Part shown: positions 4,019-43,400 of the stretch, in pieces
Position numbering within the stretch: position 1 is the stretch's first letter
Layout of the letters: each line of letters opens with the position of its first letter
From: Macrostomum lignano
Lineage: Eukaryota
Assembly (NCBI GenBank): GCA_002269645.1
Contig: NIVC01004033.1
Location: 1-63,640, forward strand
Length of the DNA: 63,640 nucleotides
Direction of reading: 5' to 3'
Translations under genes and position numbers: made by a program
Notes under the pieces: model-generated
Told to the model about the DNA's origin: nothing
The model's database searches: none
The model's input: the letters and a program-made list of their open reading frames with translations, nothing else

Positions 4019-7376
<3,358 letters not shown>

Positions 7377-19076: not shown

Positions 19077-21404
19077 GACATGACACTTCTTATGATTTTT
19101 TAAATGACGCTTCTATGATTTTTATATGATGCTTCTACGATTTTTTACATGACGCTTCTATGACTTTTTTACATGACGCTTCTATGATTTTTTAAATGAC
19201 GCTTCTATGATTTTTATATGACGCTTCTACGATTTTTACATGACGCTTCTATGATTTTTTACATGACGCTTCTATGATTTTTTACATGACGCTTCTACGA
19301 TTCTTTACATGACGCTTCTACGATTCTTTACATGACGCTTCTATGATTGTTTACATGACGCTTCTATGATTGTTTACATGACGCTTCTATGATTGTTTAC
19401 ATGACGCTTCTATGATTGTTTACATGACGCTTCTACGATTTTTTACATGACGCTTCTATGATTGTTTACATGACGCTTCTATGACTTTTTACATGACGCT
19501 TCTATGATTTTTTACATGACGGTTCTATGATTGTTTACATGACGCTTCTATGATTTTTTAAATGACGCTTCTACGATTCTTTGCATGACGCTTTTATGAT
19601 TTTTTACATGACGCTTCTATGATTTTTTAAATGACGCTTCTATGATTTTTAAATGACGCTTCTACGATTTTTTACATGACGCTTCTATGACTTTTTTACA
19701 TGACGCTTCTATGATTTTTTACATGACGCTTCTATGATTGTTTACATGACGCTTCTACGATTTTTTACATGACGCTTCTATGATTTTTTACATGACGCTT
19801 CTATGATTGTTTACATGACGCTTCTATGATTTTTTAAATGACGCTTCTACGATTCTTTACATGACGCTTCTATGATTTTTTACATGACGCTTCTATGATT
19901 TTTTAAATGACGCTTCTATGATTTTTATATGACGCTTCTACGATTTTTTACATGACGCTTCTATGACTTTTTTACATGACGCTTCTATGATTTTTTACAT
20001 GACGCTTCTATGATTGTTTACATGACGCTTCTACGATTTTTTACATGACGCTTCTTTGATTGTTTACATGACGCTTCTATGACTTTTTACATGACGCTTC
20101 TATGATTTTTTACATGACGGTTCTATGATTGTTTACATGACGCTTCTATGATTTTTATATGACGCTTCTACGATTCTTTACATGACGCTTCTATGATTTT
20201 TTACATGACGCTTCTATGATTTTTTAAATGACGCTTCTATGATTTTTATATGACGCTTCTACGATTTTTTACATGACGCTTCTATGATTTTTTACATGAC
20301 GCTTCTATGATTTTTTACATGACGCTTCTACGATTGTTTACATGACGCTTCTATGACTTTTTTACATGACGCTTCTATGATTTTTTACATGACGCTTCTA
20401 TGATTTTTATATGACGCTTCTACGATTCTTTACATGACGCTTCTATGATTTTTTACATGACGCTTTTATGATTTTTTAAATGACGCTTCTAAGATTTTTA
20501 TATGACGCTTCTATGATTTTTTACATGACGCTTCTATGATTTTTTACATGACGCTTCTTTGGATTTTTACATGACGCTTCTATGATTGTTTACATGACGC
20601 TTCTATGATTGTTTACATGACGCTTCTATGGTTTTTTAAATGACGCTTCTATGATTTTTATATGACGCTTCTACGATTGTTTACATGACGCTTCTATGAC
20701 TTTTTTACATGACGCTTCTATGATTTTTTACATGACGCTTCTATGATTGTTTACATGACGCTTCTATGATTTTTACATGACGCTTCTACGATTTTTTACA
20801 TGACGCTTCTATGATTTTTTACATGACGCTTCTATGATTTTTTACATGACGCTTCTACGATTCTTTACATGACGCTTCTACGATTCTTTACATGACGCTT
20901 CTATGATTGTTTACATGACGCTTCTATGATTGTTTACATGACGCTTCTATGATTGTTTACATGACGCTTCTACGATTTTTTACATGACGCTTCTATGATT
21001 GTTTACATGACGCTTCTATGATTTTTATATGACGCTTCTACGATTTTTTACATGACGCTTCTATGATTTTTTACATGACGCTTCTATGATTTTTACATGA
21101 CGCTTCTATGATTTTTATATGACGCTTCTACGATTTTTTACATGACGCTTCTATGATTTTTTACATGACGCTTCTATGATCGTTTACATGACGCTTCTAT
21201 GATTTTTTACATGATGCTTCTATGATTTTTATATGACGCTTCTACGATTTTTTACATGACGCTTCTATGATTTTTTAGATGACGCTTCTATGATTGTTTA
21301 CATGACGCTTCTATGATTTTTTACATGACGCTTCTATGATTTTTACATGACGCTTCTATGATTTTTTATATGACGCTTCTATGATTTTTTTACATGACGC
21401 TTCT
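19077..21404. repeat. 23-bp satellite (acatgacgcttctatgatttttt), ~100 copies
   Basis: Continuous tandem array with variant monomers. Confidence 0.98.
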
Positions 21405-21524: not shown

Positions 21525-22621
21525 GCTCTCATCAAATTTTGCACTTATATAATTCAACACTTTAAAATCCAAGCATAGAGTAAATCACACAAAGCAGTTA
21601 TGACATAATCAGTTTCTCAGTCAGTCAGTATCAGTTAACAATATGGTTACGCAATTTAAATCAAGTCTGGTGCTACGCTTCCACACTGCATTTTCAATTC
21701 AAGTTGGAGTTACAATTCAGTTATGATGCAATCTATTTCAGAATCAGAATCAACCAGTCAGTTTTTTCTCTAGCATTCTTACAATGCATTTCAAGTCGAA
21801 AAGTTTGCTTGAACTTTGCAAAAAAGCATGTTTTTCGAATATTTAATGCCTTTAGCATCGAGCAATTTCTTAGCCACGATGCATGTACCGTCACAGGAAA
21901 ATTTCTGATATAATATACATTTTTTGTAACTTTGCAGCAAAATAAAAGACAAAAAAATAATCTAATCTGTTGAAAAGAATTTATTCAATTTGTTTAAAAA
22001 GGCTTTGTTGCTTTTACTAAAGCAAATCTCTTAAAAAATACTAGCATATTTTTGCTTTCAAGTTATTTTGCTAGTCTTGCATGTACCGTGCAATGCAGAT
22101 GAGGCCCTTAGGGTACAATGTGCAGTGTATATAAGATTTCCAAATAATCTTGGTGTGCAGTATATAGGATCAAGTTTTGTGTCATGCATGGAATATCTTT
22201 GGGACTATGGGACTAATATTGCAAAAATGAATCATATTGTATAAAAGACTCTTTTTGGCATATAATTTGGTTGATTGTTTATCTTTCTTGTCTATACTAT
22301 TTATAGCAAAAATCAATATGCTTAAATATTTGTTTAAATGCTTTATTACAAGCTTAAAATCTAAAAAGCTTAAAATTTATGCCTAAAAGTGAACTTTCTA
22401 ATCTTTTTTCCGTTTAACGCTAACTTTCCCATGTGATTTTATGAATTGCATACTAGAATACCAAAGTTATTCCAAAGAATACCAAAGTATATTATAAGAT
22501 ATATATCTGCCATACAACCACACTCTAGAACACTTAAAAATTTGGGTATACATTAGCCTAGAATACCAAAGTTAGGCAAGCACAGTTGGTGTGCATGATT
22601 CCTAAAAAATATATATACAAC

Positions 22622-22722
22622 CTATAATTTGGTTGTATATACAATAATATATAATTTGGTTGTATATACAATAATATATAATTTGGTTGTATATACAATA
22701 ATATATAATTTGGTTGTATATA
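22622..22722. repeat. 27-bp tandem repeat x~4 inside the hAT
   Basis: tataatttggttgtatatacaataata units. Confidence 0.9.
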
Positions 22723-24838
22723 CATTTTCGACCATGACCTTGTTAAGCACTTGTTGCTTTTTTCATTGCCAAGCACGTTGCTCAGTAATTGGATGGTGTT
22801 GTATGTAGAATTCCAGCGGATAGTGTTTGGCACAACTAGTTTCCAACCAATGGCTTTGTAAATATTATCAAATACATTGCTATTGCAACCCTGAGCTTTC
22901 CACAATGCCTGAGCTTTGTCCATTGTCTTGTGCAACTGGGTTTTCAATATAGAGTCTGAATTGATTGCTGCAATACTGTTTGTAGCAGCTACTAAGTTCA
23001 GTGTGTAAGTAGCGCATTGCATGTGAGCTGGTAAGTGGTTGTAGGTATTCAGGGGAAGCAGTCCCCAGTTCCTCATCAACAGACTATTACCAATGGCAGG
23101 TACTCCTTAGTTTCACTGTTGTCATCACTAGTTTTTGACTCTCCAATAGAATCTAGTTTGTCACCATCTGCAGTCCCTCTGCCAGTCTTAGGCTCAGCAT
23201 CTTCTGAATAATATTGACTTAATTGAATATTGACTTAATTGTTGTTTCAAATTTCTTTTATGTTGATGAATGATGAATTGATGATGTACCAATTTAATTT
23301 TGCTTTGTAATTATAAGTTTAACTTAGTAGCATATAGCTTAGAGTATCAGCAGCAGCCTACAAGCACTAAGAAAGAACTTAAGAAGTGGGCAAGTGGCAA
23401 ACCTTCACAAATTAGAGCCATTGTCCATAGTTGTTTGAACTATTTTTGTCTCAATCCCAAACTTCGTATGCACAGCCAGCAGTGCTTATGCAAGGGCAAT
23501 ACCGGTATGACTGCCAAATAGGCATACAAAAGCAATTACTGCAAATTGGCGGGTTCTATGCTTATTTAACCAGTGGACTATCACACTGAGATAGGAGCGC
23601 TGAGTGCTAGATGTCCAGTAGTCTACAGTCATTGCTACATGCTTTGCTTGGCCTAAGAGCCTATTTGAAATTTAAATTTGAAATTTAATTAGAATTCAAA
23701 CAGGTCTAAAAATTGAGGTTCATACAAGTTTAAGTAGTTAAGGCTAGGCTAGAATACTTAACTGATAAGATGCTGTTCCATTAAAGCATGTTTCTAACTT
23801 AGACAACAACCTAATATGCCGCGTGATGGCAGGGTCCTTTGTGGGTTGAGTCCACTCACATAGTAAGCAAAATCCTCTGACTCCACAATCTGCAAAGGTA
23901 GTATGCAGCTCACTATGCAGCTCAGTAAGCGACTGTTGGCCTCTTTTTGTGAAACATCTAGATTAGAGCAACTGAAACACTAGGACAAGCTGAGCTGTTA
24001 AGCCTGTTGCACTTTTTGGCGAGGGCTTGGACTTGGACCAGTAGCTCTTAGAGAAGGACTGGCCCTTGGTGCCAATGCCAATGATGGCAAAGGTGAAACT
24101 GCTGATACTAATGCACTTGCACTAGCAGATGATGATGATGATTGCAACATAGAAATCTGGTTGGAACTTGGTATTTTCATAGCAAGATGTAGTCTTGGAA
24201 GCAGATTGAGACTCAGACTCAGTAGCTGGTAGACCACTAGTGCAGGTTGGATCAGGACCAGAAGAAGCTGATCACATATTAAGAAAAGAAAAGGATAGCT
24301 CAATGATTAATAATGAATTAAATAAATTACTTACGTAAGTGATAAGTCAATGCTAAGAAATTAAGAATATTACAAATATATTTCTGTTTAGTCTTTACTT
24401 TATATACTAGATTTCTAGTTTGTGTATAGTTCTGGTCTAAATATTAAGTTTATTTGTATATGTTTAAGTATGTATTATAATTTTTTTACTTCTCATCTCA
24501 ATATTTATTTTATTTACTTTTTGTTATTATTTACAGGCAAATTGGTAATCTAGAAATTAGAATATATATTTATTTTTTATGAGTCATGACTCATAATTAA
24601 AAATTCATTGCTTATTAAATATAATATATGACATTAGTTTATTCTTAATCTTAATTAATAATTAGTATAATTTATAAGTAAACTAGTAGTAACTAATAAG
24701 CCTTAGTCTTTGACTCCTTAGAAAATTAGTTATAGTAGAGACGTAGGTTGTAGAGTAAGAGTATGTATAGAGCAAGAAATTCTAGAATCAACCTATTACC
24801 TAACCTACAGCTACAAAAACAAGGCAAGCTATTTGACT

Positions 24839-25248
24839 TCTTCTTCATATTTGGGTCACGGACATTATAGCTGTAGCTAATAGGACTGGGTGCCTAGCAC
24901 CATACAGCTGGGTCGCTAACTCACGTGGGCGGACAGTAGACAACGGAATCCAATTTGCGGCCTGCGGCGGGTGGCCAGAGAGTGTGGGGACCCAAATCCC
25001 GGTGCGCAGGGCTCCTCCACAGACCGACTTACACTGTTAAAACCGCCATCCACCACCAACCCAGCAGTGGGGGACAACTCTCCCAGGCAGCATACCCAGG
25101 GGTGAGACCAATTCGTCACCCCAGGGACATACAGGGACGCACAAAGCTCCTGCCACATTGGCGAGGTGTCCAGGGGCGCAACGTGGACGCTGGTCTTGTG
25201 CCACCCGCTGTTTGACTTGTTGACATTGCTGCAGCTGCAGCCCCTTTC
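24839..25248 (-). mobile_element. ~410-bp non-autonomous retroelement (ribozyme head, GAA tail) inserted in the hAT
   Basis: GC-rich island in AT-rich DNA; ends ..gacccaaatatGAAGAAGA; flanked by the direct repeat tttgact (24832-24838, 25249-25255); no credible ORF. Confidence 0.75.
25105..25245 (-). ncRNA. HDV-like ribozyme
   Basis: Minus strand: P1 AGGGGC (25245-40) / GCCCCT (25177-72); P2 AGACCA (25196-91) / TGGTCT (25110-05); P3 GCG/TGC; L3 TCCACGT; P1.1 GG; P4 CACCTC/GGGGTG with inner stems; J4/2 A-CGAA-T (catalytic C at 25115). Confidence 0.88.
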
Positions 25249-26299
25249 TTTGACTGCTTAGAGTTTGAGGAAGAACTAGAATAGACATTCTTATTCTTCA
25301 CTTCCCATTTTTGAAAAACAAAATACTTTTTAATATGAGGAGAAAGATTAGGGTTTTGATTCTGCAATTCTTGTGCTTCATCATTGTCATCAGTGACTTC
25401 AATTATGTGAGTGTCAGCAATAGCATCAGCATTGGTATTCAAATTCTTGGACTTAGTAGAATCTGACTCTGTTTCTGACATGATGACAATTGACAATGAG
25501 TTGATGACAATGTCACAAATCAGTGAATCACAATTTATTCACGTATCAAATCAAATCAAATCAGATCACAATGATGATCAGCTGGCTGAGTGGCCTGTAT
25601 GGCTGTATGCTGTATTATTTTATATTATTAGTTATTAACTTATTACTTATTATTATTATTAATAATTATTTAATTACAAAATAGCCTAAAGAAAGGAAAG
25701 CAAAACTGCAAAAGCCTACATAGTAATTCAGTAAATTCCTGTAAATTCTAAATACTATTATGTTACGTACATTAAAAAAGATTGTAAAAGTTAAAATCAG
25801 TAAAACAAAATTGTTTAGAAGACTGAGAACCCTAAAAAACAATGTAAAAGAAAATTTGTTGTCTAAAATTTAGCAAATTTCAATTTTAGCAAATTTGAGC
25901 TAAATGTAATGGCACTTTTGTAGCATATGCTAAGTTATTCAATTTAGCAATATTAGCGAATTTCAAAAATCATAGCAGTGCTATATTCAAATTTAGCACC
26001 CGTTATGCCCATCACTGTTAAGAGCATGTAATATATATCCAAAAATTTAGGCACACATTGGCTTTGCAGTTTATATGGTAAATAGAAAAAATTAATAATA
26101 AGTTTATATATCGTAATTTCTTGACAAATATTTAAATAGACAATTCAAATAAACAAGTCCTCTTTTTAACAAGGATGCTCAATGCAGGCTTTATTTTAGC
26201 CATCTTTTTACACATTTGTAAGCTTTATTTTGATAGAAAAAATATTTTATTTAATTATAGGAAAATGTAAAAGACTACAGTTTAGGAACACAAAAGTTT

Positions 26300-28622: not shown

Positions 28623-29793
28623 GCCGCCCCTAGGCGGACCAGGCGGTTCCTTTGGTCCAGCGCCTCTGCGTCCGCCGCCGATGCAGCAGCAGCAGCAGCA
28701 GCAGAGCTTCCGCGGTCCTCCGCCTAGAGGTCCTCCACCGCGGGGACCGCCGCCTAACAGCGCCGGAATCCGTAGTGGCGGCGGCAGCGGGGGCGGAGGT
28801 GGTGGAGGAGGCAGCCTGCCGCCTATGCTTCGCGGCCAGCCGCCTCCTGGCTGGCGGCCTCCGATAAGTGGCCCGCCGCCATCGCCGCAGCAGCAGCGCG
28901 GCGCTCCCCGCCGCTTGGCGGCCTGAGCGGATCCCGGCCGATGCCACCGGGCGGGGTTGGGCCTCCGCAGCAGCAGCAGCAGCAGCCTCGCCCTCCAATG
29001 CCAGGCCAGGGCGGCTCCGGCCAGCAGCAGCAGTCGGGTATGCCACCAGCGCCGCCAAATCTTAGCGTGCCGCCGCCCGGCATGCCGACAGACCGGTCCG
29101 GGATGCCGCCTCCGCCCGGCTTCATGCCCTCCGGCCCGCCGCCGCCCACGCCAGTCTCTATGGTTGGCGGCGGCTCCGGGGGGCCGCCCGGCCAGCATGC
29201 CATGCAGCAGCCGCCGCCGCACATGGCCTCGCCTATGGGTCTGCGCGGGGCCCCGCCGCCTGGCATGCCGCCGCATCGTCAGCAGGCGCCGCCGCAGCAT
29301 TTGATGCCGAATCAGAATTCCTCCTCATCCGGGATGATGCGGCCGCCTATGCCGCACATGATGGGCGGCCCGATGCAGCAGCAGCAGCAGCCTCATCCGC
29401 AGCATCTCGGCCCTCCCGGGTACGGAATGCCGCCGCCGTCGTTTGGTGGCCCGCCGCCGCCTCATCTGATGGGCCCGCCGCCCAACTCAATGATGGGCGG
29501 CGCCCCGCCGCCGCCGCCTCCGCCGCCGCCAGAGAATGTGTGGGTTGAGAACTGCACGCCGGAAGGAAAGCCGTACTTTTATCATCTGCGCAGCCGCGAG
29601 ACTCGCTGGGAACGGCCTGAAGGGGCTCGGATTATGACTCAGGTAGGCATGACTGCTCCGATAGCAACCAGACCATGTAAGCTGGCAGACAGATTTAAAT
29701 ATGTAATAGGAATGTAGGTAACCGCTTAGTAAGATGAAAGCATATAGCCAAATCGTGAGGTGGTCAGACAGATCTACTGATAATAGTCTTGTG

Positions 29794-29887
<94 letters not shown>

Positions 29888-32800
29888 GAGACGCTAAGGC
29901 AGGCAGACAGGACAGACGCTAAGGGAGACAGACAGGCCGACAGACAAGGCAAAAGCACTAGCATGCTGCATGCTGCACCATTTTTCAGGCGGAGGTCGAC
30001 GCTGTAGCCGAAGGCGCCCCTCCAGGTGCGGCGGCTGGCGGCCCCATGTCTGCCGGAGGGTCGGCCGTCCGATCCGGCATGCCGCCGGCGACTTCGGCTC
30101 CGCCTCTGTTCGGCATGTCCGGCGGGCTGCCATCCATGAGCCAGCAACAGCAGCAGCAGCCGCCGCCGCCCAACGGTCCCGCCAAGCCGCCAGAAGTGGC
30201 CGAATGGGCCGAGTACCGGGCGGACGATGGCCGGCCATATTATCATAACCTGCGCACCAGCGAAACCGTCTGGGAGAAGCCGGCCCCGCTGCTAGCCTGG
30301 GAGGCTGGCGGCAAGCCGCCTGCGCCGGCCGCGGCACCGCCGCCTATTATGAAAGAGACTCAGGCGGCGGCTTCCTTGACGGCGGCCAAAGATGGAGCAG
30401 TTCCGACCAGCGTTGCCACGACTGGCGTCAGTCAGCAGGTGGCGGAGGTGGACAAGCGGCAAGCGGCTGCTCAGTCTCAGCAGCAGCAGCAGGACAAGTC
30501 CCGGCCCGTGAAGAGCCAGCCGGTGCCCGGCACCCCCTGGTGTGTTGTTTGGACAGGCGACGATCGGGTGTTCTTCTTCAATCCATCCAAGCGGCTGTCG
30601 CTGTGGGACCGGCCGGAGGAGCTGGTTGGCGTCAAGGAGGTCGAAAAAATTCTCGGCAAAGGCGCGGCAGCGGAGAAACGCGCGGCCGGCAAATCGGCCA
30701 CCGGCGCGTCGGCAGCTAAAAAAAAGAAAGTCTCTTCTGCTAAGCTTGATACAAAAAAGAAAAAGACCGCCGACGGGCAGAAGAAGAAGAAAAGAAAGCG
30801 CAGCGGCTCGGACGACGACGATGACGATGAAGAAGACGGCGAAGACGACGAGTCCGGCACCGACGAGGACGGCGACGATTCCAATGACGACGACGACGAT
30901 GACGATGACGAGGATCGAAGAAAGGTGAAGCGGCGCCGCCGGGCCGCTGCCGAGAAGAAGCGGCAGCAGCTGCAGAAGAAGCGACGCCGAGACAGCGGCA
31001 GCAGCGGCTCTAATCAGGATGACGACGACGAGGACGACGATGAGGACAAAGAAGACAAGGAGGACGAGGAGAACGAGGACCTCGGCGAAGATGACGATGA
31101 CGACAAGCCGCTGCTGGAGCGGGACAAGATTGAGCCGGGAAAGGTAAACGCGTTCGAGGCGGAGGTGCAGGCGGCGCGGGAGCGGGCCAGCCTGCCGTTG
31201 GACGCCCGGATGCAGCAGTTCCGGGAGATGCTGGCGGAGAAGCAGGTGTCAGCTTTCAGCACTTGGGACAAAGAGCTGCACAAGATCGTGTTTGACCCGC
31301 GCTATCTGCTGCTGCCCAGCAAGGAGCGCAAGCTGGTGTTCGACCAGTACATGAAGGAGAGGGCCGAGGAGGAGCGGCTGGAGAAGAACAGGAAGCTGAG
31401 GGAGAAGAAGGAGGCCTACAAAGCGCTGCTCGAGGAGGCTAAAGTTAGCGCCAAGTGAGTAGCGGATTAGTTTAGTTTATTAGTGATTTAAGGTAAAGGT
31501 CATTGTTCTAACTTTTTAAAAAGGTATATGGAAAATGCCTTCCGTAAAATGCCTTTGTAAATATCAAAGTCGTTTTCGCACTACCAAAGTTGGCCAATTT
31601 ATTAGCAGACTCAAATCCAGTGTTTCACGCATCCTATCTGTACAGGTGTCGTTTTCAAAACTTATTCTGTTGAACAGAACCTTGCTTACATTGAAAAAAC
31701 GAAGACACAAACACTGTTGCGGGAGTGAGAAAGTAGATCACTGTAAGATTATTGGTCGGTGCCAGTCAGACTTTTGACTAAAAATACTTGAATCAATGTA
31801 CATAAAAACACAAACCTAGTCTCAGTGCTCAACTGCAACATTGCTTTAAACTGTTCTTGCTTGAGTCCAATTTATTAATTAATAGTTTAATCAACAGCCA
31901 GTCACCCTGCAGATGACTAACCCGTTGAAAACTTTACCGTGCTTAGGAGAGTCGCGAAAAAGTCGTCCTGGATTCGTGTTAGCGCTTAACTTTCTATTAA
32001 CTCTAGTAGACTAGTAGAGTTGTTATAAATGCGAAATGCGATTTTCATCGATAAAGTGACGCAGATGCACTTTAGACGCAACTCAGTTATTCCACAGCGA
32101 CTCTACGACCCCAGAGTCAGTTGCGTCGCCCCAGAGTCGCAGACAATAAAACGCCTTAGTTTGACTCCTAGGCGACTTTTTGACGACTTTTTGGCGACTT
32201 GTAGTTGTAACGCGACGTCACGTCGTTTTAGAGTCGTCTAAAGTTCTTTCCTATTTTATGTTACCTGCAACGAATCTTGGGCGACGCAAGTGACTCTGGG
32301 ACGCTACTTGGCCTCGAAACCCCTCCAAAATAACACCTATTTTGATAACACCAATAATCTTTCTAATGCTTTTAAAGGCAGATTCTATCCCTCTGAGTTA
32401 AGTTACTTCTTCATCTGTAAATGATCTTTGGTTTTCTATTATTGGTTTCATTTAGTGCCTATATTATCGCCAACTTGCAGAACCACGTTCCAGGACTTCT
32501 CGGCCAGATGGGGCAAAGACGACCGGTTCAAGGGCATCGAAAAGGCTCGCGAACGGGAGCTGCTGTTTCACGATTACATCACGGAGGATTTGAAGAAACA
32601 GGAGAGGGAGGAGAGGCAGCGTGAGAAGGAAAAGGTGAGTCCAAATTATTGGGATAAGTTTTGTGCATTCTTAACAAACAATTTCCATGTCTGCTTGGCA
32701 TAATTAACTAAGGTTTAGTAATAGTTATATGGAAGAATATGTTTGCATTCGTGTCTGGATTGCCCGGGCCTAGCTGTCAGGGAGTTGGGTCTATCTGGAC

Positions 32801-35800
32801 TTTTGTAGAGTGGGTGGGTGTTTGAAGGAGTAGGGTGGGTATTTAAAGGAGTGGGGTGGGTGTTTGAAGGAGTGGGGTGGGTGTTTGAAAGAGTGCGTGG
32901 GTGTTTGAAGGAGGCGGTGGGTGTTTGAAGGAGTGGGGTGGGTGTTTGAAGGAGTGGGGTGGGTGTTTGAAGGAGTGGGGTGGGTGTTTGAAGGAGTGGT
33001 TGGGTGTTTGAAGGAGTGGTTGGGTGTTTGAAGGAGTGGTTGGGTGTTTGAAGGAGTGGTTGGGTGTTTGAAGGAGTGGTTGGGTGTTTGAAGGAGTGGT
33101 TGGGTGTTTGAAGGAGTGGAGTAGATGTTTTAAAGAGTGGGGTGGGTGTTTGAAGAGTGGGGTGGGTGTTTGAAGAGTGGAGTGGGTGTTTAAAAGAGTG
33201 AGGGGTGTTTGGATGTATGGGGAGAGGATTGGGATGTCTAGAAATGAGTGGCGTGTCTAGATAGAAGAGTGGATGTCTAGAGAAAGAGGAGTGGGGTGTC
33301 TAGATTAATGAGTGGGTTGTCTGGAGAGAGAGAAGTGGGGTGTTCGGAGAGAGAGGAGTGGGGTGTCTGCAGAGAGATGAGTGGGGTGTCTGGAAAGACG
33401 AGTGAGGTGTCTGGAGAGAGAGGAATGAGGTGTCTGGAGAGAGGAGTGAGGTGTCTGGAGAGAGGAGTGAGGTGTCTGGAGAGAGAGGAATGAGGTGTCT
33501 GGAGAGAGGAGTGAGGTGTCTGGAGAGAGAGGAATGAGGTGTCTGGAGAGAGGAGTGAGGTGTCTGGAGAGAGAGGAATGAGGTGTCTGGAGAGAGGAAT
33601 GAGGTGTCTGGAGAGAGGAGTGAGGTGTCTGGAGAGAGAGGAATGAGGTGTCTGGAGAGAGGAGTGAGGTGTCTGGAGAGAGAGGAGTGGGATATCTGGA
33701 GAAAGTTAAGCGAGTAGTTCGCAGTGCGAATTAGTTTCTGAAATCTCATTATGCGCCGAAGCTTGACGCGCCTGTCTCAAGTAAATGACGCTCAAACACC
33801 AAAGCTAGCCGAAGAAGTTAATGAATAATCTATATTGTTCCTATGCACATCGAACTGCGTAGTCGCATGTGCCACTCCATTGGCTATCCTTAGTAGTAAA
33901 TGTGTCACATTTTACTGATTGCTATGTTCTGTTTGTTCATAGCGAATATTTCTGTCGCTTGAACTAACTGTATTGATTTTTTCGTTACAACAAGTTTATT
34001 GCTTTTTACACACAAGCTTCAACAACTCGCGTATTAATAAATTAATGGATTCATGAATCGAGGAACTATGGAAGAATATTTAAATTAGTGTACTATTATG
34101 AGCATTCGTTTGCTAAATCAATTTCTGTAGTACTGTTTCTATTTCATGAGTGCATAAGTAGTAAAGACAGGATAATTTTATATGAGACTTATTAGGTAAT
34201 TTAAGAGAACAGGTTAGTAATAAATTGTATATTAGAATTGCATATATTGATTACCAGAGCTGGAATACTGACTACTTTTACTAGGCTAATTTTTCAGTCC
34301 GTATTTTTTCTACTAAGAGGAATTCACCACACAGTTTTATTTGCACTACATGTACTACTACAATGCCGGCACGCGAAATTCCAGAATGCTGTCCTAATAT
34401 TGTGCGGGCATTCATAAGCATCGAGATATTTAATGGCTCTTTCATGGCAGGATTTTTCCCTAGGTACGAAAATGCCAACCAGTTATTACGAGTAGGATAA
34501 CTTGATGGGCCACTTGATGCATATCATTGCTTAGTGTAAAATAGCTTCTCTACTTCAGTTCAGTAGCAAGGAAGAATTTGTAAGCTTTTTTACGAAAAAA
34601 AAGACTACTGACTTGCAGACGTAAGGAACTCGCTATTGGTGCGCAGTTATAAATGTACATTAGCTAGCGCTACTGAAATGTACATGGCAGGCAGATTTAG
34701 ACTAGAACACCAAGGAAGGCAATAAAAACTGGGCGGCGGGGCGGGGGTAGAGATTTTTAGGGTTCAGCTGGGAGGGGGTTAAGTGAGCCAATAAACGAGC
34801 CTTTATGTGTGTGTACATGGCAGATTGGGCCTAAGGGTTAAGAGGTCTATTAAATGTGTCTATATAGTATTCTAGGCTGGAAGCCCCAAGAAAGATAGTA
34901 AAAACAAGGGAGTCAATAAACGAGTCGTTCCCTAAAGTACATTAAAAAATGTTTCTATTTGACTTTCTACTGAACTGAAAGTAGCTTACAAGTAAATTTG
35001 TTAAAATCTATAGCATCTGTTGTTCCAATCCAATTTGGCAACATCCGTTATATGACTTGCGTAGATTTGCTTTAGATTTGTAACATTATAAATTATAACG
35101 CATACGATACTTAGAGAATTTTACGCTATTCGTCATTTCCCACAAAGTCCCACATGAGCAGCTTAGATAGATTTTATTAATTCAGTTATCGAACTCTTAT
35201 AGGTATGATAGTTAGGACATTCCAATCTCGTAACAATCAAACGAGTCAGTTTTATTAATCAAACAAACAAATAACTCAATTACTTATTTACGTGAGAGAA
35301 AAAAACAAGTATTAATGCTTTTATTTGCTTCTTTTATCAAGTGCTAGTAGTATGTACATCATATTCTATTTTGGTTGATTATTTGAATTCTTGTACCGTG
35401 CGTTCGTGACCCATGCCATACGCGCTCCTTGCTCCGACTGTTAAACTAAGCGAAACTAATAGCACCGCAGCTTCTCATTTGTCGCATTCCGACCCACCCT
35501 GTCTCTTTCTCTTTCTATCCAATCGCTAATATTATTGCTCACCCGTGACGGACGAACGGCAGACATCTATGGCGCCATTGCTTGACACTGCCGAAGAGTG
35601 AAAGATGAGAAAATCAAGGTTTGTGCCACGAATCTGTCTGCATTGCAATTCTAAGGGGCAAGAATTGGAAGTCCTGTGTTAGCATTTTACCTTTCGGGCT
35701 GCAAGCAAGCCCGGTTGAGACTTCGGAGGATCAATAAGTTTTGCTCGATTGTTCGCTTCTCTAATTCCCCTTCCAGTACTGAAGTACTAAGTTATTTGTC

Positions 35801-38786
35801 TCGCATTCTGAGTACTGTTTTTGAATAAAAGCCTTTTTTTAACAAAACAAATAGGCTATAAACCAGCAAATGTGAATGTACTCCTATGTCAAGTAATGTG
35901 TACACTGCGCGTCATTCAATTTTTTATCGAGTGATATTCCATGTACATTGCGTGTCGTGCAATGTACACTGCGCGACAATGTACATCAGTGTCAATCAGT
36001 GTACATTGCGTGTCAATCAATGTACAGGCATATAATATTTCGTATAGTACCGTATGTACTTAAAATAAAATAAATTATTCTTAACTTTGACAATTTTTAC
36101 TGTAAAATAGATATTCTGTTTAATTTTGTGTGCACAGGTTATTATTAAAACTTTTAATAATCGCCTGTCTGTGCTATTTCTGTGTTTGCGCGTGCCTGGC
36201 TGCAGAGGATGAGGTACTTTAATCTTCGGTCGGGTGGCTTGATTGATATTTATATCGAGTGCCCATACTGACAACTTGTCACTATCGTGTTTTGCAATCT
36301 ACTTGAAATCTTGCCATTGATTGTTCTAATGTTAGTTTTGCACATTTAATAATGAAATTTACATGTATGTTATTTTTATAGGTAGATCAATCTGATTTAG
36401 GTCCTGATCATTCTGATAGTTAATAATTGCTTATATTTTCATATTTCGTTAACCAGTCATACCATACCAGTCTCAGGTTATGTCTACCATTCTTCAGGGT
36501 ATGTCTGCCATTCTTCAGGTTATGTTTACCATTCCTCAGGGTATGTCTGCCATTCTTCAGGTTACTTTTACCATTCCTCAGGGTATGTCTGCCATTCTTC
36601 AGGTTATGTTTACCATTCCTCAGGGTATGTCTGCCATTCTTTAGGTTATGTCTGCCATTCTTCAGGGAATGTCTACCATTCTTCAGGTTGTCTGCCATTC
36701 TTCAGGGAATGTCTACCATTCTCCAGGTTATGTCTACCATTTTTCAGGTTATGTCTGCCATTCTTCAGGGAATGTCTACCATTCTTCAGGTTATGTTTAC
36801 CATTCCTCATGGTATGTCTGCCATTCTTCAGGTTATGTCTGCCATTCTTCAGGGAATGTCTACCATTCTTCAGGTTATGTCTGCTATTATTCAGGTTGTG
36901 TCTGCCATTCTTCAGGTTATGTCTGCCATTCTTCAGGTTATGTCTGCCATTCTTCAGGGAATGTGTACCATTCTTCAGGTTATGTCTGATATTATTCAGG
37001 TTATGTCTGGGATTCTTCAGGGAATGGGAATGTTCTTCAAGTTGGATGTCTGCCTTTGTTATTAATTTATGTCTTATAAGTATGTAGTTAACCTTATTGA
37101 TTTTTATTTTTAATATTTGCTCCTTAAAAGTTCGAATCTGTTTTCACGACAGCAAAGTAAATAATAAGTATTATGAAGTATAGTTACGGAGTTCTCGCTA
37201 AAAGTATTAAAACTCATTTGAGCCGAAAACAACGCTCAAGTTTTTTTAGTAATTTGTTCTGAATGTAAAAGTTCGTTAAAGTTCGTTTGTTTGAGCAAAA
37301 GTTTTTTTTTGAGAAAAAAACTTCTATGAGACATGTCTATGTCTATGTCTTTGAGACAAAAAAGTGTCTCATAGACATTTGGGCCAGTTAATATTTATAT
37401 ATTTTGTACCTGATTCGGCAATCATGGGCTCCGGTTTTTGCTTGCGCGCGGTCTCGTTTGCACTTTTAAATTAATTAATTGACTACTAAAGGCTTACTAG
37501 TGCTATCTTGTGGCTATTTATACTTTACTTAGCCCCTTATGCAAGATTGATAATTTCTTAGCGCACCTGCTTTTGTGTAGTTAATTAACTCACAAGAACC
37601 TGTTCTTGATCGATTGACCAATCGCATGCCTGGTGCCTAAATGACTAGCTTGCGGCAGCTTGCTGCAGCTTGCCATGATCAATAGCTTGTTTTATTGTTT
37701 TCCTTCATGCTCTATTTATTGGTTCTCGGCTGATTCATTCGGCTGTATTGGTAAGCCAGGGACCTCTGGATACAGCTGGACTGGAAGCAGGCCCGCACCC
37801 ATCATGAACTATACTAGTGACCCCTGGAGCTGGACTGGAAGCGGACCCGCGCCATCCTGAACTCTACCAGGGACCTCTAGGTAGAGTTGGACCGGAAGCA
37901 GGCCCGCACCCATCCTGAACTCTACCAGGGACCTCTTGGTAGAGTTGGACCGGAAGCAGGCCCGCACCCATCCTGAACTCTACCAGGGACCTCTTGGTAG
38001 AGTTGGACCGGAAGCAGGCCCGCACCCATCCTGAACTCTACCAGGGACCTCTAGGTAGAGTTGGACCGGAAGCAGGCCCGCACCCATCATGAACTATACT
38101 AGTGACCCCTGGAGCTGGACTGGAAGCAGGCCCGCACCCATCCTGAACTCTACCAGGGACCTCTGGATACAGCTGGACTGGAAGCAGCGGACCCGCGCCT
38201 ATCCTGAACTCTACCAGGGACCTCTAGATAGAGGTGGACTGGAAGTGACAGACCCGCGCCTATCCTGAACTCTGCCAGGGACCTCTGGATAGAGCTGGAC
38301 TGGAAGCGGAATCTTACGGCCGAATCTCAGCTAGAACTAGAATAGAGTGCCTGCTTTCAGTTCTGGCTTGTTCTTAGTCACTAGGCTAATTCAACCATGA
38401 CTTGAATTGAAGCCACAGATAGAAAGCAAAATTTACATTGTAGCTACTAACTAAAGTGAGTAGCTGGACTGGATAGCGTGACCAGAAAAGAAGTGTATTG
38501 TAATATTGCAAAAGCCGTTGGAATTATTCAACTGTGGGAAGACAGGCAGCGTCCCTACTCAGTAGTGAAGCACTGCACCTCATTTAATTTTAGTCTTGGC
38601 CTGCCAATAAGTTTGCCGCGTTTACAGATTTAATTTGCACGCTAATACGTTTTATTTAGAATTTGACGACTGCCTGTTGGTTGATATTAATATCGTTTGA
38701 ACTGCGAGCGTGATTAACAGCTGGCTATCAATTGAGTTTTCGTCTTTTTGTCATTCTATGATAATTATCATATTATTACGTATAAC

Positions 38787-38821
<35 letters not shown>

Positions 38822-39235
38822 TAACTTGACGCCCTCCAAGGCCTGGGCGTGTGTTTTTCTTTTGTACACTTCTTTTAAGTGCCAAATAATTTCTTGTTGT
38901 GGACCTCACCTCGCGCACTAATCCGAATTTAATCACCCGATCCTTCCCAAATCTCGGGAGCCGTTTTGCACGTAGCGCACTGGGGGGGGGACAGATTTGT
39001 CATCATCAATGCCGAATTTATAGTTAACTGTATTATTTTACCTGCTCTAGTCAGATGTCAATCTGATTTATTACTGACGTTTGTCTTCTGATGCCTTTAT
39101 TGTATTCGTACGCGCTTCAGTCTTAGCATTTCTTGCTTCAGCAACAACTCAGTGTCGCTGCTGCTGCTAGTGGAAAAGTTTAATGCTTTTATTATTGATA
39201 TCAAAGTGACTAATGATGCTTTAATTAACTAGCGA

Positions 39236-39269
<34 letters not shown>

Positions 39270-39289
39270 CCTGTCTGTCTGTCTGTCCC

Positions 39290-39321
<32 letters not shown>

Positions 39322-39355
39322 CCTGTCTGTCTGTCCCTGTCTGTCTGTCTGTCCC

Positions 39356-39407
<52 letters not shown>

Positions 39408-39471
39408 CCTGTCTGTCTGTCCCTGTCTGTCTGTCTTTCTGTCTGTCTGTCCCTGTCTGTCTGTCTGTCCC

Positions 39472-39511
<40 letters not shown>

Positions 39512-39593
39512 CCTGTCTGTCTGTCCCTGTCTGTCTGTCTGTCTGTCTGTCCCTGTCTGTCTGTCTGTCCCTGTCTGTCTGTCTGTCTGTCCC

Positions 39594-39633
<40 letters not shown>

Positions 39634-40058
39634 CCTGTCTGTCTGTCCCTGTCTGTCTGTCTGTCTGTGACTTCTATCAGTTTCTATCTTTCATTAACTC
39701 AGTAAAAATGCAAAGTTTTAAAATCGTTTTGCCATTTTTCTGCACACAATATTATCTTAACGATCCTTCCCAAATCTCGGGAGCCGTTTTGCACGTAGCG
39801 CACTGGGGGGGGGACAGATTTGTCATCATCAATGCCGAATTTATAGTTAACTGTATTATTTTACCTGCTCTAGTCAGATGTCAATCTGATTTATTACTGA
39901 CGTTTGTCTTCTGATGCCTTTATTGTATTCGTACGCGCTTCAGTCTTAGCATTTCTTGCTTCAGCAACAACTCAGTGTCGCTGCTGCTGCTAGTGGAAAA
40001 GTTTAATGCTTTTATTATTGATATCAAAGTGACTAATGATGCTTTAATTAACTAGCGA

Positions 40059-40092
<34 letters not shown>

Positions 40093-40134
40093 CCTGTCTG
40101 TCTGTCTGTCCCTGTCTGTCTGTCTGTCTGTCCC

Positions 40135-40174
<40 letters not shown>

Positions 40175-40190
40175 CCTGTCTGTCTGTCCC

Positions 40191-40237
<47 letters not shown>

Positions 40238-40335
40238 GTCTGTCTGTCTGTCTGTCTGTGTCTGTCTGCCTGTCTGTCTGTCTGTCTGCCTGTCTGTCTG
40301 TCTGTCTGTGTCTGTCTGTCTGTCTGTCTCTCTGC

Positions 40336-40378
<43 letters not shown>

Positions 40379-40440
40379 GTCTGTCTGTCTCTCTGCTGTC
40401 TGTCTTTCTGTCTGTCTGTCTGTCTGTCTGTGTGTCTGAC

Positions 40441-40472
<32 letters not shown>

Positions 40473-43400
40473 CGCCTGCCTGTCTGTCTCTCTGACAGAC
40501 TGTCTGACTGTTTGTGAGCCTCTATGACTTCTATCAGTTTCTATCTTTCATTAACTCAGTAAAAATGCAAAGTTTTAAAATCGTTTTGCCATTTTTCTGC
40601 ACACAATATTATCTTAACGATTCAAATTGCTACAAAAGACAAGTGTGGCAAATTTGCTAGCCAAAACTCGTCCCTTGTTTTCATGCCGTGACCCAGAAGT
40701 CAGGTCGCTACTCTTCGCATTGAGACAAAAATAATGATATATTGAATTATGTTACGTCACCAATGCAGCAATACTCTCGTAACAAAGTTTTGTATTATTT
40801 ATTAAACTGCCGAAATCATAAACTAGTTTGTAATGACAATTAGCCAGGAATGCAGGACCCAGCCTAGAATCTGCTAGTCGCATACAGTGCACGCATTGAT
40901 TATTGATACAGTTTCAGGGAGATTATCATCACGAAAGTTGCTTTCACTTCAGGCAAAGAAAATCGACTTGTTTGTTGCGTTTTTTTCATTTTTCCAGTTT
41001 CTTAATTATGATGTGCGATTAATAAAAAAATGCAAGTTATTTACTTTTCATTTGTATCCCCAATCCAGGTGTCTGTTTCGAAGAGTTAAGTACATTAGTG
41101 TGCTCTTTCCCTAGCAGATCATCGACCAGTTGTATTTTTAGTATTAAGAGCCAGTCAGTTTTTATGGTATATTTAATACATAAGAATGATTGGTTTATCT
41201 GCAGACTTTATAGTCGCTATCAAATATTCGTGCTAGATGTCTATGCAAATTATTTTGTTTCAAAACAATGACCTAAAATTATCTATAATTTTTCTTTAAA
41301 ATGAACGAACTGGGGAACTGAGAGGGTGTAGCATTTTTTAACTCAGGCCATGTACATTCAGGACTCATTCTTACACCCTCCATATCGGCGGGCGCTCCGT
41401 CCTCCGGTCCACCGCTCCCGTTTTAGGCGAAGTCAGACTTCCTCAAGCTGCTGAAGGAGCAGTCGGGCCTCAGTCGGTCGTCGCGTTGGAGCGAGGTCCG
41501 CAAGACCATCGACTCAGATCCGCGCTACCGGGCAGTGGAGAGCAGCTCAAGGCGGGAGGACTACTTCAAGGATTACATCAAAGGATTAGATAGTGTGAGC
41601 TCATCAATCTGTTTGAGAATTTGTTTCTTTGAGAAGGCTTGTGTCTGGACTGGGGTCCTAGATGGCCACTACCGCTGTTTAGTTGGGTTAGATAAGTGGG
41701 TGAAGGTAGGTAGATAATGTGAGGTAGATAAGCAGGTGAGGTAGCTTAGCAGGTGAGGTAGATAAGCAGGTTAGGTAGATAAGCAGGTGAGGTAGCTAAG
41801 CAGGTGAGGTAGATAAGAAGGTGAGGTAGATAAGCAAGTGAGGTAGATAAGCAGGTGAGGTAGATAAGCAGGTGAGGTATTGCATAAATAAGCAGGTGAG
41901 GTAGATAAGCAGGTGAGGTAGATAAGCAGGTTAGGTAGATAAGCAGGTGAGGTAGCTAAGCAGGTTAGGTAGCTAAGCAGGTTAGGTAGATAAGCAGGTG
42001 AGATAGATAAGCAGGTGAGGTAGATAAGCAGGTGAGGTAGATAAGCAAGTGAGGTAGAAAAGCAGGTGAGGTAGATAAGCAGGTGAGGTAGCTAAGCAGG
42101 TGAGGTAGCTAAGCAGGTTAGGTAGATAAGCAGGTGAGGTAGATAAGCAGGTGAGGTAGATAAGCAGGTGAGGTAGATAAGCAAGTGAGGTAGATAAGCA
42201 GGTGAGGTAGATAAGCAGGTGAGGTAGATAAGCAGGTGAGGTAGATAAGCAAGTGAGGTAGATAAGCAGGTGAGGTAGATAAGCAGGTGAGGTAGATAAG
42301 CAGGCGATTTAGATAAGCAAGTGAGGTAGATAAGCAGGTGAGGTAGATAAGCAGGTGAGGTAGATAAGCAGGTGAGGTAGATAAGCAGGTGAGGTAGATA
42401 AGCGAGGTAGGATAGATAATCTAGGTAAGCAGAGGAGCCAGTTAAGGTAGGTGGATAATCCGATCCCAATCCTCTATCCTCTATCCTTCATCAGAAGAGC
42501 GACCGGCACCACGGTCACCGCGGTGAAGCTTTAGAGAAGTCCAGCGCTGGTGATACCAGCACCAAAGATGGTCAACAGAGCGGCGAGCCTGCCGCTGGCG
42601 CCTCGGCCGCCGCTTCAGATGACGAAGCCGACAATGAGGAAGCCGAAGACGAGGAGACTCGGCGCGTTCGGGAGCGCCGCGAGCGCCAAGAGGCCAGCAT
42701 TAGGGAGCGCCAGAAGGCCGTCAAAGAGGAGATGGCGTCTATTCTGCGCGAGCGGGACAAGGTAAACATGTCTAGCTGATGTTCTCCTCGGGTTCGTATA
42801 TATTTAATATATAAGCCGTTAGGTAGAGATGTGAGGAGATGGGGAAGATAGGGGAGAAAATGGGAAAGGTAAGGACAGGATGGGGAAGCTGAAGGAGAGG
42901 ATGGGGAAGCTGATGGAGAGGATGGGGAAGATGAGGGAGATGATGGGGAACATAAGGGAGAGGATGGGGAACATGAGGGAGAGGATGAGGAACATGAGGG
43001 AGAGGATGTGGAAGAAGGGAGGGTGGGGGAGTAGAAGGGAAAGATAAGGGAGAGGATATGGAAGGGTATTGAAAAGATAGAGGAGAGGGTGAGGGAGGGG
43101 ATGGAAAGATGGGGAGAGGGTGGGAAAGATGGGGGAGAGGATGGGAAAGATGGGGAGAGGGTGGGGAAGATGGGGGAGAGGGTCTGGAAGATGGGGAAGA
43201 GGGTGGGGAAGATGGGGAAGAGGATGGGAAAGATGGGGGAGGGGATGGGAAAGATGGGGGAGGATGGGAAAGATGGGGGAGAGGGTGGGGAAGATGGGGG
43301 AGAGGGTGGGGAAGATGGGGGAGAGGATGGGAAAGATGGGGGAGGGGATGGGAAAGATGGGGGAGAGGGTGGGGAAGATGGGGGAGAGGATGGGAAAGAT

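What the first reader, a model, noticed from the sequence alone, without database searches (positions are those of the whole stretch)
25105..25245. Intact-looking HDV-like self-cleaving ribozyme on the minus strand
Seen: all elements of the nested double pseudoknot fall in the right order: P1 AGGGGC/GCCCCT, P2 AGACCA/TGGTCT, P3 GCG/TGC, L3 UCCACGU, P1.1 CC/GG, branched P4 and J4/2 CGAA with the catalytic C. Known: HDV-like ribozymes process the 5' ends of several non-LTR retrotransposon clades (R2, RTE, ingi/L1Tc). Unusual here: an A-U pair rather than G.U at +1, a 6-bp P1, and a 43-nt J1/2. No ORF track or gene annotation would reveal it.
Basis: partly seen in the sequence, partly recalled or inferred. 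Interest (0 to 1): 0.9.

Follow-up and report, generated by a model that had tools for sequence, protein, structure and literature searches.

The report
HDV-like ribozyme heading a flatworm retroposon
A 141-base stretch has nearly all the hallmarks of a hepatitis-delta-type self-cutting RNA and sits at the start of a short retroposed insertion in a Macrostomum flatworm genome, a known way for such elements to trim their own RNA; this copy carries a change at the cut site that probably weakens it.

Summary
A generic HDV-like descriptor hits only this site in the window. A strict version found 0 loci in 1500 composition-preserving shuffles. Rfam does not confirm it: nothing reaches the gathering score. 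HDV_ribozyme (19 of 50 bits) and CPEB3 (13.9 of 35 bits) match the core only at noise-level E-values.

The strongest independent support is position. The predicted cut site lies 1 nt from the end of the only 15/16 direct repeat in the surrounding 1.4 kb. That repeat brackets a 524-bp insertion with no recognisable protein-coding content. The window is from Macrostomum.

I read it as the 5'-processing ribozyme of a short non-autonomous retroposon, like R2 SIDEs or NARTc. The 6-bp P1 and 43-nt J1/2 are within known ranges.

"Intact" is doubtful. A at +1 replaces G1; the same change cuts rat CPEB3 cleavage from 92% to 3%. A compact alternative P1, GGG(U)GGC, keeps the G.U wobble but has a bulge.

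No other copy could be retrieved, so covariation is untested. This is a new member of a known kind, of moderate interest.

The parts
25247..25262 (-). Upstream copy of the putative target-site duplication, TCTAAGCAGTCAAAGA
   Evidence: the repeat finder family D9. It is the only 16-mer pair with at most 1 mismatch in 24300-25700.
25246..25246 (-). Single A between the duplication and the predicted +1. It is either an untemplated or junctional base, or position -1.
   Evidence: Read directly from the sequence.
25240..25245 (-). P1 5' strand AGGGGC. Predicted scission is 5' of A25245, which forms an A-U pair instead of a G.U pair.
   Evidence: -10.8 kcal/mol with GCCCCU. It is the only [AG]GGGG[CT] 6-mer in the 8-kb AT-rich neighbourhood.
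25197..25239 (-). J1/2, 43 nt and weakly structured. It contains the alternative compact P1 strand GGG(U)GGC at 25206-25200 (U25203 bulged), followed by ACA.
   Evidence: MFE -6.9 kcal/mol, z = +1.62; alternative P1 -7.0 kcal/mol. The Rfam HDV model places its P1 here.
25191..25196 (-). P2 5' strand AGACCA
25178..25190 (-). P3 GCG, L3 UCCACGU (U25187 and G25182 occupy the positions of the reverse-wobble pair; C25186 and C25185 form P1.1) and P3' UGC
   Evidence: 11 of 13 bases match the CPEB3 consensus GCGUUCACGUCGC shown.
25170..25177 (-). P1 3' strand GCCCCU, followed by the GG of P1.1
25117..25168 (-). P4 domain, closed by CACCUCG (25168-25162) and UGGGGUG (25123-25117)
   Evidence: Its stability is not better than that of shuffles (z = -0.62).
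25112..25115 (-). J4/2 CGAA, with the candidate catalytic cytosine C25115
   Evidence: CGAAUU is identical to the CPEB3 consensus shown.
25105..25110 (-). P2 3' strand UGGUCU
24723..25104 (-). Rest of the inserted element. It is GC-rich to about 24843 (59% GC for 25206-24843), then has a 120-nt AT-rich tail. There is no recognisable ORF, poly(A) or tRNA-like part.
   Evidence: Its ORFs have no protein homologues.
24707..24722 (-). Downstream copy of the putative target-site duplication, TCTAAGGAGTCAAAGA
   Evidence: (D9).
25207..25221 (-). Inner direct repeat AACAAGTCAAACAGC. It ends exactly at G25206, the start of the alternative P1. Its partner is at 24828-24842.
   Evidence: D10. It matches 13/15, one of 21 such pairs in 1.4 kb, so it is weak on its own.
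24828..24842 (-). Partner of the inner direct repeat, AAGAAGTCAAATAGC

Best explanation
The segment 25245-25105 (minus strand) is a genuine HDV-like, double-pseudoknot, self-cleaving ribozyme sequence. It forms the first 141 nt of a roughly 524-bp retroposed element (25246-24723) with no recognisable protein-coding content. That element inserted, with a 16-bp target-site duplication, into AT-rich transposon-like DNA of a Macrostomum flatworm.

Inferred mechanism:
1. The element is co-transcribed with upstream host sequence.
2. P1 (AGGGGC/GCCCCU), P2, P3, P1.1 and P4 fold.
3. C25115 acts as general acid, with a bound Mg2+.
4. The RNA cuts itself 5' of A25245.
5. The released element RNA has a 5'-OH end with no host leader.
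6. It is copied into new sites by target-primed reverse transcription, using the proteins of an autonomous LINE supplied in trans.

This is the same logic as R2 SIDEs or NARTc.

What is shown: the motif, its statistical excess and the insertion boundaries.

What is inferred: cleavage, the catalytic role of C25115 and mobilisation in trans.

This particular copy is probably slow or inactive, because +1 is A (an A-U pair instead of G.U) and the 43-nt J1/2 is poorly structured.
For: - All helices and conserved core positions are in the right order.
- It is the only hit of a generic descriptor in the window.
- The strict descriptor gave 0 of 1500 shuffles, and the looser-L3 version 1 of 1500.
- Of 4227 Rfam families, the only two minus-strand matches at E<=10 are the two HDV-class models, HDV_ribozyme and CPEB3.
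- The P3-L3-P3' block matches the CPEB3 consensus at 11 of 13 bases, and J4/2 CGAAUU is identical to it.
- The only 15/16 direct repeat in 1.4 kb brackets 25246-24723 and ends 1 nt from the predicted +1.
- GC content jumps from 33% to 52-59% at that boundary.
- AGGGGC is the only P1-compatible 6-mer in 8 kb of local sequence.
- There are no terminal inverted repeats (read directly from the ends), and a 16-bp duplication fits target-primed reverse transcription (established knowledge).
- Precedents exist: a P1 of 6-7 bp and a P1-to-P1' separation of 23 to over 700 nt (PMC3774820), and short elements made of a ribozyme plus a 3' end (PMC3414825, PMC3383444).
Against: - Rfam scores are far below the gathering thresholds. 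An unrelated bacterial sRNA model (Hrs1) scores a similar E-value.
- G1 and the G.U wobble are absent (PMC8495972, PMC8233481).
- J1/2 is less stable than its shuffles (z = +1.62), and the whole RNA prefers a competing fold. Long unstructured J1/2 linkers slow catalysis (PMC4908430).
- Position -1 is A, a poor choice: the order is U>C>A>G (PMC1874588).
- No second copy was found, either in the window or in any searchable collection. There is therefore no covariation evidence and no proof that a repeat family exists.
- No RT partner or shared 3' tail was identified.
- There is one extra A between the duplication and +1.
- A second candidate P1 exists.
Confidence: 0.6

Rival explanations
1. The real (ancestral) ribozyme is the compact 102-nt form 25206-25105. 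Its P1 is GGG(U)GGC/GCCCCU with the canonical G1.U wobble, its J1/2 is ACA, and it cuts 5' of G25206. On this reading the distal AGGGGC is either fortuitous or was recruited later. One version is that a 364-nt element (25206-24843) first inserted elsewhere, with the 15-bp inner repeat as its duplication. A read-through transcript was then cleaved at the upstream AGGGGC and was retroposed here together with both flanks, which would explain the two nested repeat pairs.
For: - The Rfam HDV and CPEB3 models both place P1 on GGGUGGC.
- This P1 keeps G1.U, has C at -1 and has a short J1/2, as in most family members (PMC4908430).
- The inner repeat 25221-25207 / 24842-24828 ends exactly at G25206.
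- 25206-24843 is compositionally uniform at 59% GC, while 24842-24723 is 33% GC like the host.
- Upstream shifts of the cleavage site by changes in P1 have been proposed for R2 (PMC3774820).
Against: - This P1 needs a bulged U in mid-helix and is weaker (-7.0 against -10.8 kcal/mol). P1 imperfections usually abolish cleavage (PMC3774820, PMC8495972).
- The inner repeat is only 13/15, one of 21 such pairs in 1.4 kb.
- Taken alone, this model leaves two things as unlikely coincidences: the 15/16 outer repeat next to AGGGGC, and the local uniqueness of AGGGGC.
- The nested version needs 3' read-through to be tolerated by the reverse transcriptase.
Confidence: 0.2
2. It is a chance resemblance. 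The motif is not a ribozyme or ribozyme relic, and the flanking repeat is coincidental.
For: - Rfam E-values are at noise level (0.3-4), comparable to an unrelated model.
- The loose descriptor occurs by chance about once per 19 windows.
- Extrapolating the strict descriptor (about 4e-5 per window, inferred) gives roughly one chance hit per large genome.
- There is no folding-energy signal, no second copy, and G1 is missing.
Against: - The strict descriptor gave 0 of 1500 shuffles.
- Both HDV-class models pick the same core out of 4227 families.
- The predicted cut site independently coincides with the end of the only 15/16 repeat and with a composition step.
- AGGGGC is unique in 8 kb.
Confidence: 0.12
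3. The GC-rich block is a protein-coding exon, or a retrocopied mRNA fragment, and the pairings are incidental. One frame is open from 25257 to 24919 and ends at a consensus-like 5' splice site, CAC|GTGAGT, near 24923.
For: - A 113-codon open frame (24919-25257) and a 140-codon open frame (25119-25538) exist.
- Exons in this window are GC-rich while intergenic DNA is AT-rich.
Against: - There are no homologues in 5.8 billion proteins, a set that does hold Macrostomum lignano UniRef entries.
- There are none among 1.84 billion representative proteins for the opposite-strand ORF.
- There is no Pfam match.
- This reading does not explain the descriptor match or the flanking repeat.
Confidence: 0.04

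Closest known systems
R2 SIDEs (short internally deleted elements) and the R2 5' ribozyme (PMC3414825, PMC3774820)
   Same: - A short non-coding element consisting of a 5' HDV-like ribozyme plus a 3' end.
- The ribozyme defines the element's RNA 5' end.
- P1 of 6-7 bp, long variable J1/2 and variable P4.
- Junction variation of a base or two.
   Different: - It is not in 28S rDNA; there is no rRNA in the window.
- The 16-bp duplication suggests an AP-endonuclease-type LINE partner rather than R2 (inference).
- +1 is A.
- No autonomous parent was identified.
L1Tc/NARTc Pr77-L1TcRz of trypanosomatids (PMC3185411, PMC3383444, PMC4035085)
   Same: A non-autonomous element (NARTc) shares with its LINE a 5'-terminal HDV-like ribozyme that releases the element RNA from co-transcripts.
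   Different: - The host phylum is different.
- That ribozyme is a compact 77 nt and doubles as an internal promoter. No promoter function was tested here.
- No sequence relationship was shown.
Mammalian CPEB3 ribozyme (Rfam RF00622)
   Same: - P3-L3-P3' matches the consensus at 11 of 13 bases, and J4/2 CGAAUU is identical.
- Natural A1-U (G1A) variants exist in mammals, and they cleave poorly (PMC8233481).
   Different: - The score is 13.9 bits against a threshold of 35.
- CPEB3 is a single-copy intronic ribozyme with a 7-bp P1 and a short J1/2.
- This one heads a retroposed insertion in a flatworm. Convergence on the core cannot be distinguished from homology.
drz-Agam-2 large HDV-like ribozymes (PMC4908430)
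   Same: A large J1/2 insertion between P1 and P2.
   Different: - Agam-2 has a stable P1.2 helix and a 12-bp P2 that together accelerate cleavage.
- Here J1/2 is poorly structured (z = +1.62) and P2 is 6 bp.
- No Rfam drz-Agam model matched at E<=10.

Membership tests
HDV-like self-cleaving ribozymes | Nested double pseudoknot in the order P1-J1/2-P2-P3-L3-P3'-P1'-P1.1-P4-J4/2-P2' | tested here: met
   It is the unique descriptor hit in the window. The strict version gave 0 of 1500 shuffles.
HDV-like self-cleaving ribozymes | P1 of at least 6 bp without internal mismatches (PMC8495972, PMC3774820) | tested here: met
   AGGGGC/GCCCCU forms 6 Watson-Crick pairs. The alternative proximal P1 has a bulged U.
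HDV-like self-cleaving ribozymes | G at +1 forming a G.U wobble at the cleavage site. G1 is called invariant for activity (PMC8495972). | tested here: not met
   +1 is A25245, paired with U25172. Natural CPEB3 G1A variants are still counted in the family but cleave about 3% instead of 92% (PMC8233481). The feature is met only in the alternative register starting at G25206, which has a bulge.
HDV-like self-cleaving ribozymes | Catalytic C in J4/2 followed by purine-A-A; L3 with the U...G reverse-wobble positions and CC pairing to GG (P1.1) | tested here: met
   C25115-G-A-A, L3 UCCACGU and GG 25171-25170. The conserved L3 G is described in PMC3774820.
HDV-like self-cleaving ribozymes | Score at or above the gathering threshold of an Rfam HDV-class covariance model | tested here: not met
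   HDV_ribozyme scores 19 of 50 bits and CPEB3 13.9 of 35 bits. No drz-Agam or F. prausnitzii model matched. These models do not score P2 or P1.1 (pseudoknots), and they aligned J4/2-P2' to a decoy within P4 and P1 to the proximal GGGUGGC rather than across the 43-nt J1/2.
HDV-like self-cleaving ribozymes | Pairings conserved through compensatory changes among homologues | not testable with these tools
   No other copy was found in the window, in metagenome or viral contigs, or through protein-level searches of the element's ORFs.
HDV-like self-cleaving ribozymes | Mg2+-dependent self-scission giving 5'-OH and 2',3'-cyclic phosphate ends, abolished by mutating the catalytic C | not testable with these tools
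   This needs an experiment.
Non-LTR retroposon with a 5' processing ribozyme (SIDE/NARTc-like, non-autonomous) | Insertion flanked by a target-site duplication, with the ribozyme +1 at the element's 5' end | tested here: met
   A 15/16 repeat at 25262-25247 and 24722-24707, unique in 1.4 kb. +1 lies 1 nt inside it.
Non-LTR retroposon with a 5' processing ribozyme (SIDE/NARTc-like, non-autonomous) | Multiple dispersed copies, and a 3' end shared with an autonomous LINE | tested here: inconclusive
   It is single-copy in the 63.6-kb window. It shows no similarity to the LINE-like remnant at about 4300-7400. The host genome is not searchable here.
Autonomous R2 / RTE / ingi-L1Tc elements | Reverse transcriptase and endonuclease ORF downstream of the ribozyme; for R2, insertion in 28S rDNA | tested here: not met
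   There is no long ORF and no Pfam domain downstream. There is no rRNA in the window.

The most novel reading that the evidence does not exclude
The locus may record a shift of the ribozyme cleavage site. A 364-nt element with a compact, G1.U-type ribozyme (starting at G25206) lost its proximal P1 through a U insertion. A chance AGGGGC in its upstream flank then took over as P1. The resulting RNA was longer at both ends and was retroposed here. That would leave two nested pairs of flanking repeats and two alternative P1 strands in one copy, and would show how ribozyme-headed retroposons capture flanking sequence and move their 5' boundary.
Probability: 0.15. Interest if true: 0.6.

Novelty: new member of a known kind. 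Interest (0 to 1): 0.4.

Why it matters
HDV-like ribozymes are known to trim the 5' ends of several non-LTR retrotransposon lineages. In flatworms, the papers I could search report them only for planarian R2 (PMC3774820).

A confirmed ribozyme-headed, non-coding retroposon in Macrostomum would matter in three ways:
- It would extend the SIDE/NARTc strategy (ribozyme plus 3' end, mobilised in trans) to another phylum and to a non-rDNA context.
- It would give a marker for annotating a repeat family in a very repeat-rich model genome.
- It would offer a natural A1-U, long-J1/2 variant for testing how strict the G1.U requirement is.

It does not change the general picture of what these ribozymes do.

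Tried and rejected
- **Rfam.** The gathering scan of the whole window gave nothing. The E-value scans gave only sub-threshold HDV and CPEB3 hits plus an unrelated sRNA.
- **Copies in the window.** blastn at word sizes 9 and 7 and a 3-mismatch core search found none.
- **Copies elsewhere.**
  - Two metagenome scans and one viral scan with core patterns returned 0.
  - Translated element ORFs had no homologues in the 5.8-billion-protein set or in the 1.84-billion representative set.
  - Two window ORFs were not on record in the assemblies.
  - Literature searches for the core sequence strings returned only unrelated primers.
- **tRNA-derived SINE.** ARAGORN found nothing.
- **DNA transposon or MITE.** There are no terminal inverted repeats at either candidate boundary, and a 15-16-bp duplication is atypical for these (read directly from the sequence, plus established knowledge).
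- **Thermodynamic support.** The z-scores are not significant.
- **'hAT transposon' host context.** I saw hAT-like motifs in ORF fragments at 22561-23979. Pfam, NCBIfam and PDB searches did not confirm them, so this stays an unverified impression.
- **Genome-wide background for flanking repeats.** The background was swamped by satellites, so I used the local pair counts instead.

Full report
**Observation**

| Element | Sequence | Coordinates |
|---|---|---|
| P1 | AGGGGC | 25245-25240 |
| J1/2 | 43 nt | 25239-25197 |
| P2 | AGACCA | 25196-25191 |
| P3 / L3 / P3' | GCG / UCCACGU / UGC | 25190-25178 |
| P1' | GCCCCU | 25177-25172 |
| P1.1 partner | GG | 25171-25170 |
| P4 domain | closed by CACCUCG/UGGGGUG | 25168-25117 |
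| J4/2 | CGAA (C25115) | 25115-25112 |
| P2' | UGGUCU | 25110-25105 |

P1 and P2 are each six perfect Watson-Crick pairs (-10.8 and -7.0 kcal/mol). The L3 loop has U and G at the positions of the conserved reverse wobble. It also has the two Cs that can pair with the GG to form P1.1.

A 'branched' P4 is not established. Neither P4 nor the whole RNA folds better than shuffled sequence, and the unconstrained minimum-free-energy fold is a competing structure.

**Is it more than chance?**

- I wrote a generic HDV-like descriptor: P1 6-7 bp, J1/2 up to 60 nt, P2 5-7 bp, P3 3 bp, L3 NCC..., GG, CNRA, then P2'. It hits only this locus in the window on either strand. It also hits 0.053 loci per composition-preserving shuffled window, so that version is weak.
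- Requiring P2 of at least 6 bp, a P4 closing stem and C[AG]AA left 1 locus in 1500 shuffles. Adding the L3 U...G positions left 0 in 1500.
- By extrapolation the strict motif is expected about 4e-5 times per window. That is negligible for one window but of the order of one per very large genome. The motif alone is therefore not proof.

**Rfam**

No family reaches its gathering score anywhere in the window. With relaxed thresholds, HDV_ribozyme (19 bits, threshold 50) and CPEB3_ribozyme (13.9 bits, threshold 35) both match the core at 25149-25217. Their E-values are 0.3-4, and an unrelated bacterial sRNA model scores similarly.

This failure has an explanation. The models do not score the P2 and P1.1 pseudoknots, and they aligned J4/2-P2' to a decoy inside P4 and P1 to the proximal GGGUGGC rather than across the 43-nt J1/2.

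It is still notable that the only two minus-strand matches out of 4227 families are both HDV-class. The P3-L3-P3' block also matches the CPEB3 consensus at 11 of 13 bases, and CGAAUU is identical to it.

**Context**

- The window is eukaryotic. A TCERG1-like ORF at 29962-31455 is 95% identical to a Macrostomum lignano protein, so the source is a Macrostomum flatworm.
- The candidate opens a GC-rich block (52-59% GC) set in DNA of 17-33% GC.
- The only 16-mer direct repeat with at most one mismatch in the surrounding 1.4 kb is TCTAAG[C/G]AGTCAAAGA, at 25262-25247 and 24722-24707. It brackets a 524-bp segment, 25246-24723.
- The predicted +1 nucleotide (A25245) is the second base of that segment.
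- The segment has no recognisable protein-coding content, no tRNA-like part and no poly(A). It has no terminal inverted repeats (read directly from the ends), and nothing else in the window resembles it.
- AGGGGC is the only P1-compatible hexamer in 8 kb of local sequence.

The cut site was predicted from RNA pairing alone. Its coincidence with an insertion boundary defined by a flanking duplication and a composition step is the strongest evidence that this is a real retroelement 5' ribozyme.

**Mechanism (inferred)**

1. The element is co-transcribed from upstream DNA.
2. It folds into the double pseudoknot.
3. It cleaves 5' of +1, with C25115 as general acid.
4. This releases an element RNA with a defined 5'-OH end.
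5. A LINE-encoded reverse transcriptase copies the RNA into new sites by target-primed reverse transcription, which fits the 16-bp duplication.

With no ORF of its own, the element would be non-autonomous. It resembles Drosophila R2 SIDEs, which consist of a ribozyme plus a 3' end (PMC3414825), and NARTc relative to L1Tc (PMC3383444).

- A 6-bp P1 is standard. R2 ribozymes separate P1 from P1' by 23 to over 700 nt (PMC3774820), and most family members have a P1 of 6-7 bp (PMC4908430).
- The A-U pair at +1 is the real problem. A review calls the G.U wobble essential and G1 invariant (PMC8495972). In CPEB3 ribozymes the natural G1A change alone lowers rat cleavage from 92% to 3% (PMC8233481).
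- Position -1 is A, a poor choice (PMC1874588).
- The J1/2 is less structured than its shuffles. Long unstructured linkers slow these ribozymes (PMC4908430).

So 'intact-looking' overstates the case. This copy is probably weak or dead, possibly after a G-to-A change, although the RNA that created it must once have been processed near this position.

**A second P1**

It can pair with the same GCCCCU. It restores a G1.U wobble, a 3-nt J1/2 (ACA) and C at -1, at the cost of a bulged U and 3.8 kcal/mol. The Rfam models put P1 here.

A 13/15 direct repeat (25221-25207 and 24842-24828) ends exactly at G25206 and would bracket a compositionally uniform 364-nt element. That repeat is one of 21 equally good pairs in 1.4 kb, so it is weak alone.

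Weighing the coincidences each model requires:
- The distal-P1 model is clearly favoured over a purely proximal model.
- A nested history cannot be excluded. In it, a compact element lost its proximal P1, a flank-encoded P1 took over, and the longer RNA was retroposed.

**What could not be done**

No other copy could be retrieved.
- The element's ORFs have no protein homologues.
- Core-pattern scans of metagenome and viral contigs returned nothing.
- The host genome is not in any DNA collection available here.

Covariation, the family consensus at +1, the true 5' boundary and the autonomous partner therefore remain untested.

I found no paper describing HDV-like ribozymes in Macrostomum.

**Verdict**

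- Most likely (about 0.6) this is a genuine HDV-like ribozyme at the head of a short non-autonomous retroposon, and probably an impaired copy.
- It is a new member of a known kind, of moderate interest.

Noticed in passing
window 19078-21404: A satellite array of about 102 copies of a 23-bp unit (ACATGACGCTTCTATGATTTTTT), 91% matching. It lies about 3.7 kb from the element.
   Followed up: no
window 28776-31455 (+): A TCERG1-like gene with WW and FF domains. It is 95% identical over half its length to a Macrostomum lignano UniRef protein, which identifies the source organism. The 5% difference may mean a paralogue, a homeologue or a sister species.
   Followed up: partly
window 22561-23979 and 25119-25538 (-): Broken ORF fragments with motifs that I recall from hAT-type transposases (such as ...YTLNLVA... 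and ...RWNSTY...), plus a 121-codon ATG-initiated ORF that runs into the ribozyme. Pfam, NCBIfam and PDB searches gave no support.
   Followed up: partly
window ~4300-7400 (+): A GC-rich block with an ORF (6567-7358) that has a weak RNase H match (16.9 bits, below threshold). It may be a LINE remnant. It shows no similarity to the ribozyme-bearing element.
   Followed up: partly
window 24919-24925 (-): The 113-codon open frame through the GC-rich block ends at a consensus-like 5' splice site, CAC|GTGAGT. I considered an exon reading and judged it unlikely, because there are no protein homologues.
   Followed up: partly
window 1-2600, 32700-33800, 36400-37100, 39200-40550, 42500-43600: Long low-complexity or microsatellite tracts, such as (GTCT)n-like arrays and proline-rich pseudo-ORFs open in several frames on both strands. 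They dominate the GC-skew extremes.
   Followed up: no
window 24577-24596: A perfect 20-nt palindrome (TGAGTCATGACTCA core) in the AT-rich DNA downstream of the element.
   Followed up: no
window 25254-25246, 25218-25208, 24839-24829, 24715-24707 (-): The heptamer AGTCAAA occurs four times, once in each of the outer and inner flanking repeats. It could be a preferred endonuclease target or a trace of nested insertions.
   Followed up: partly
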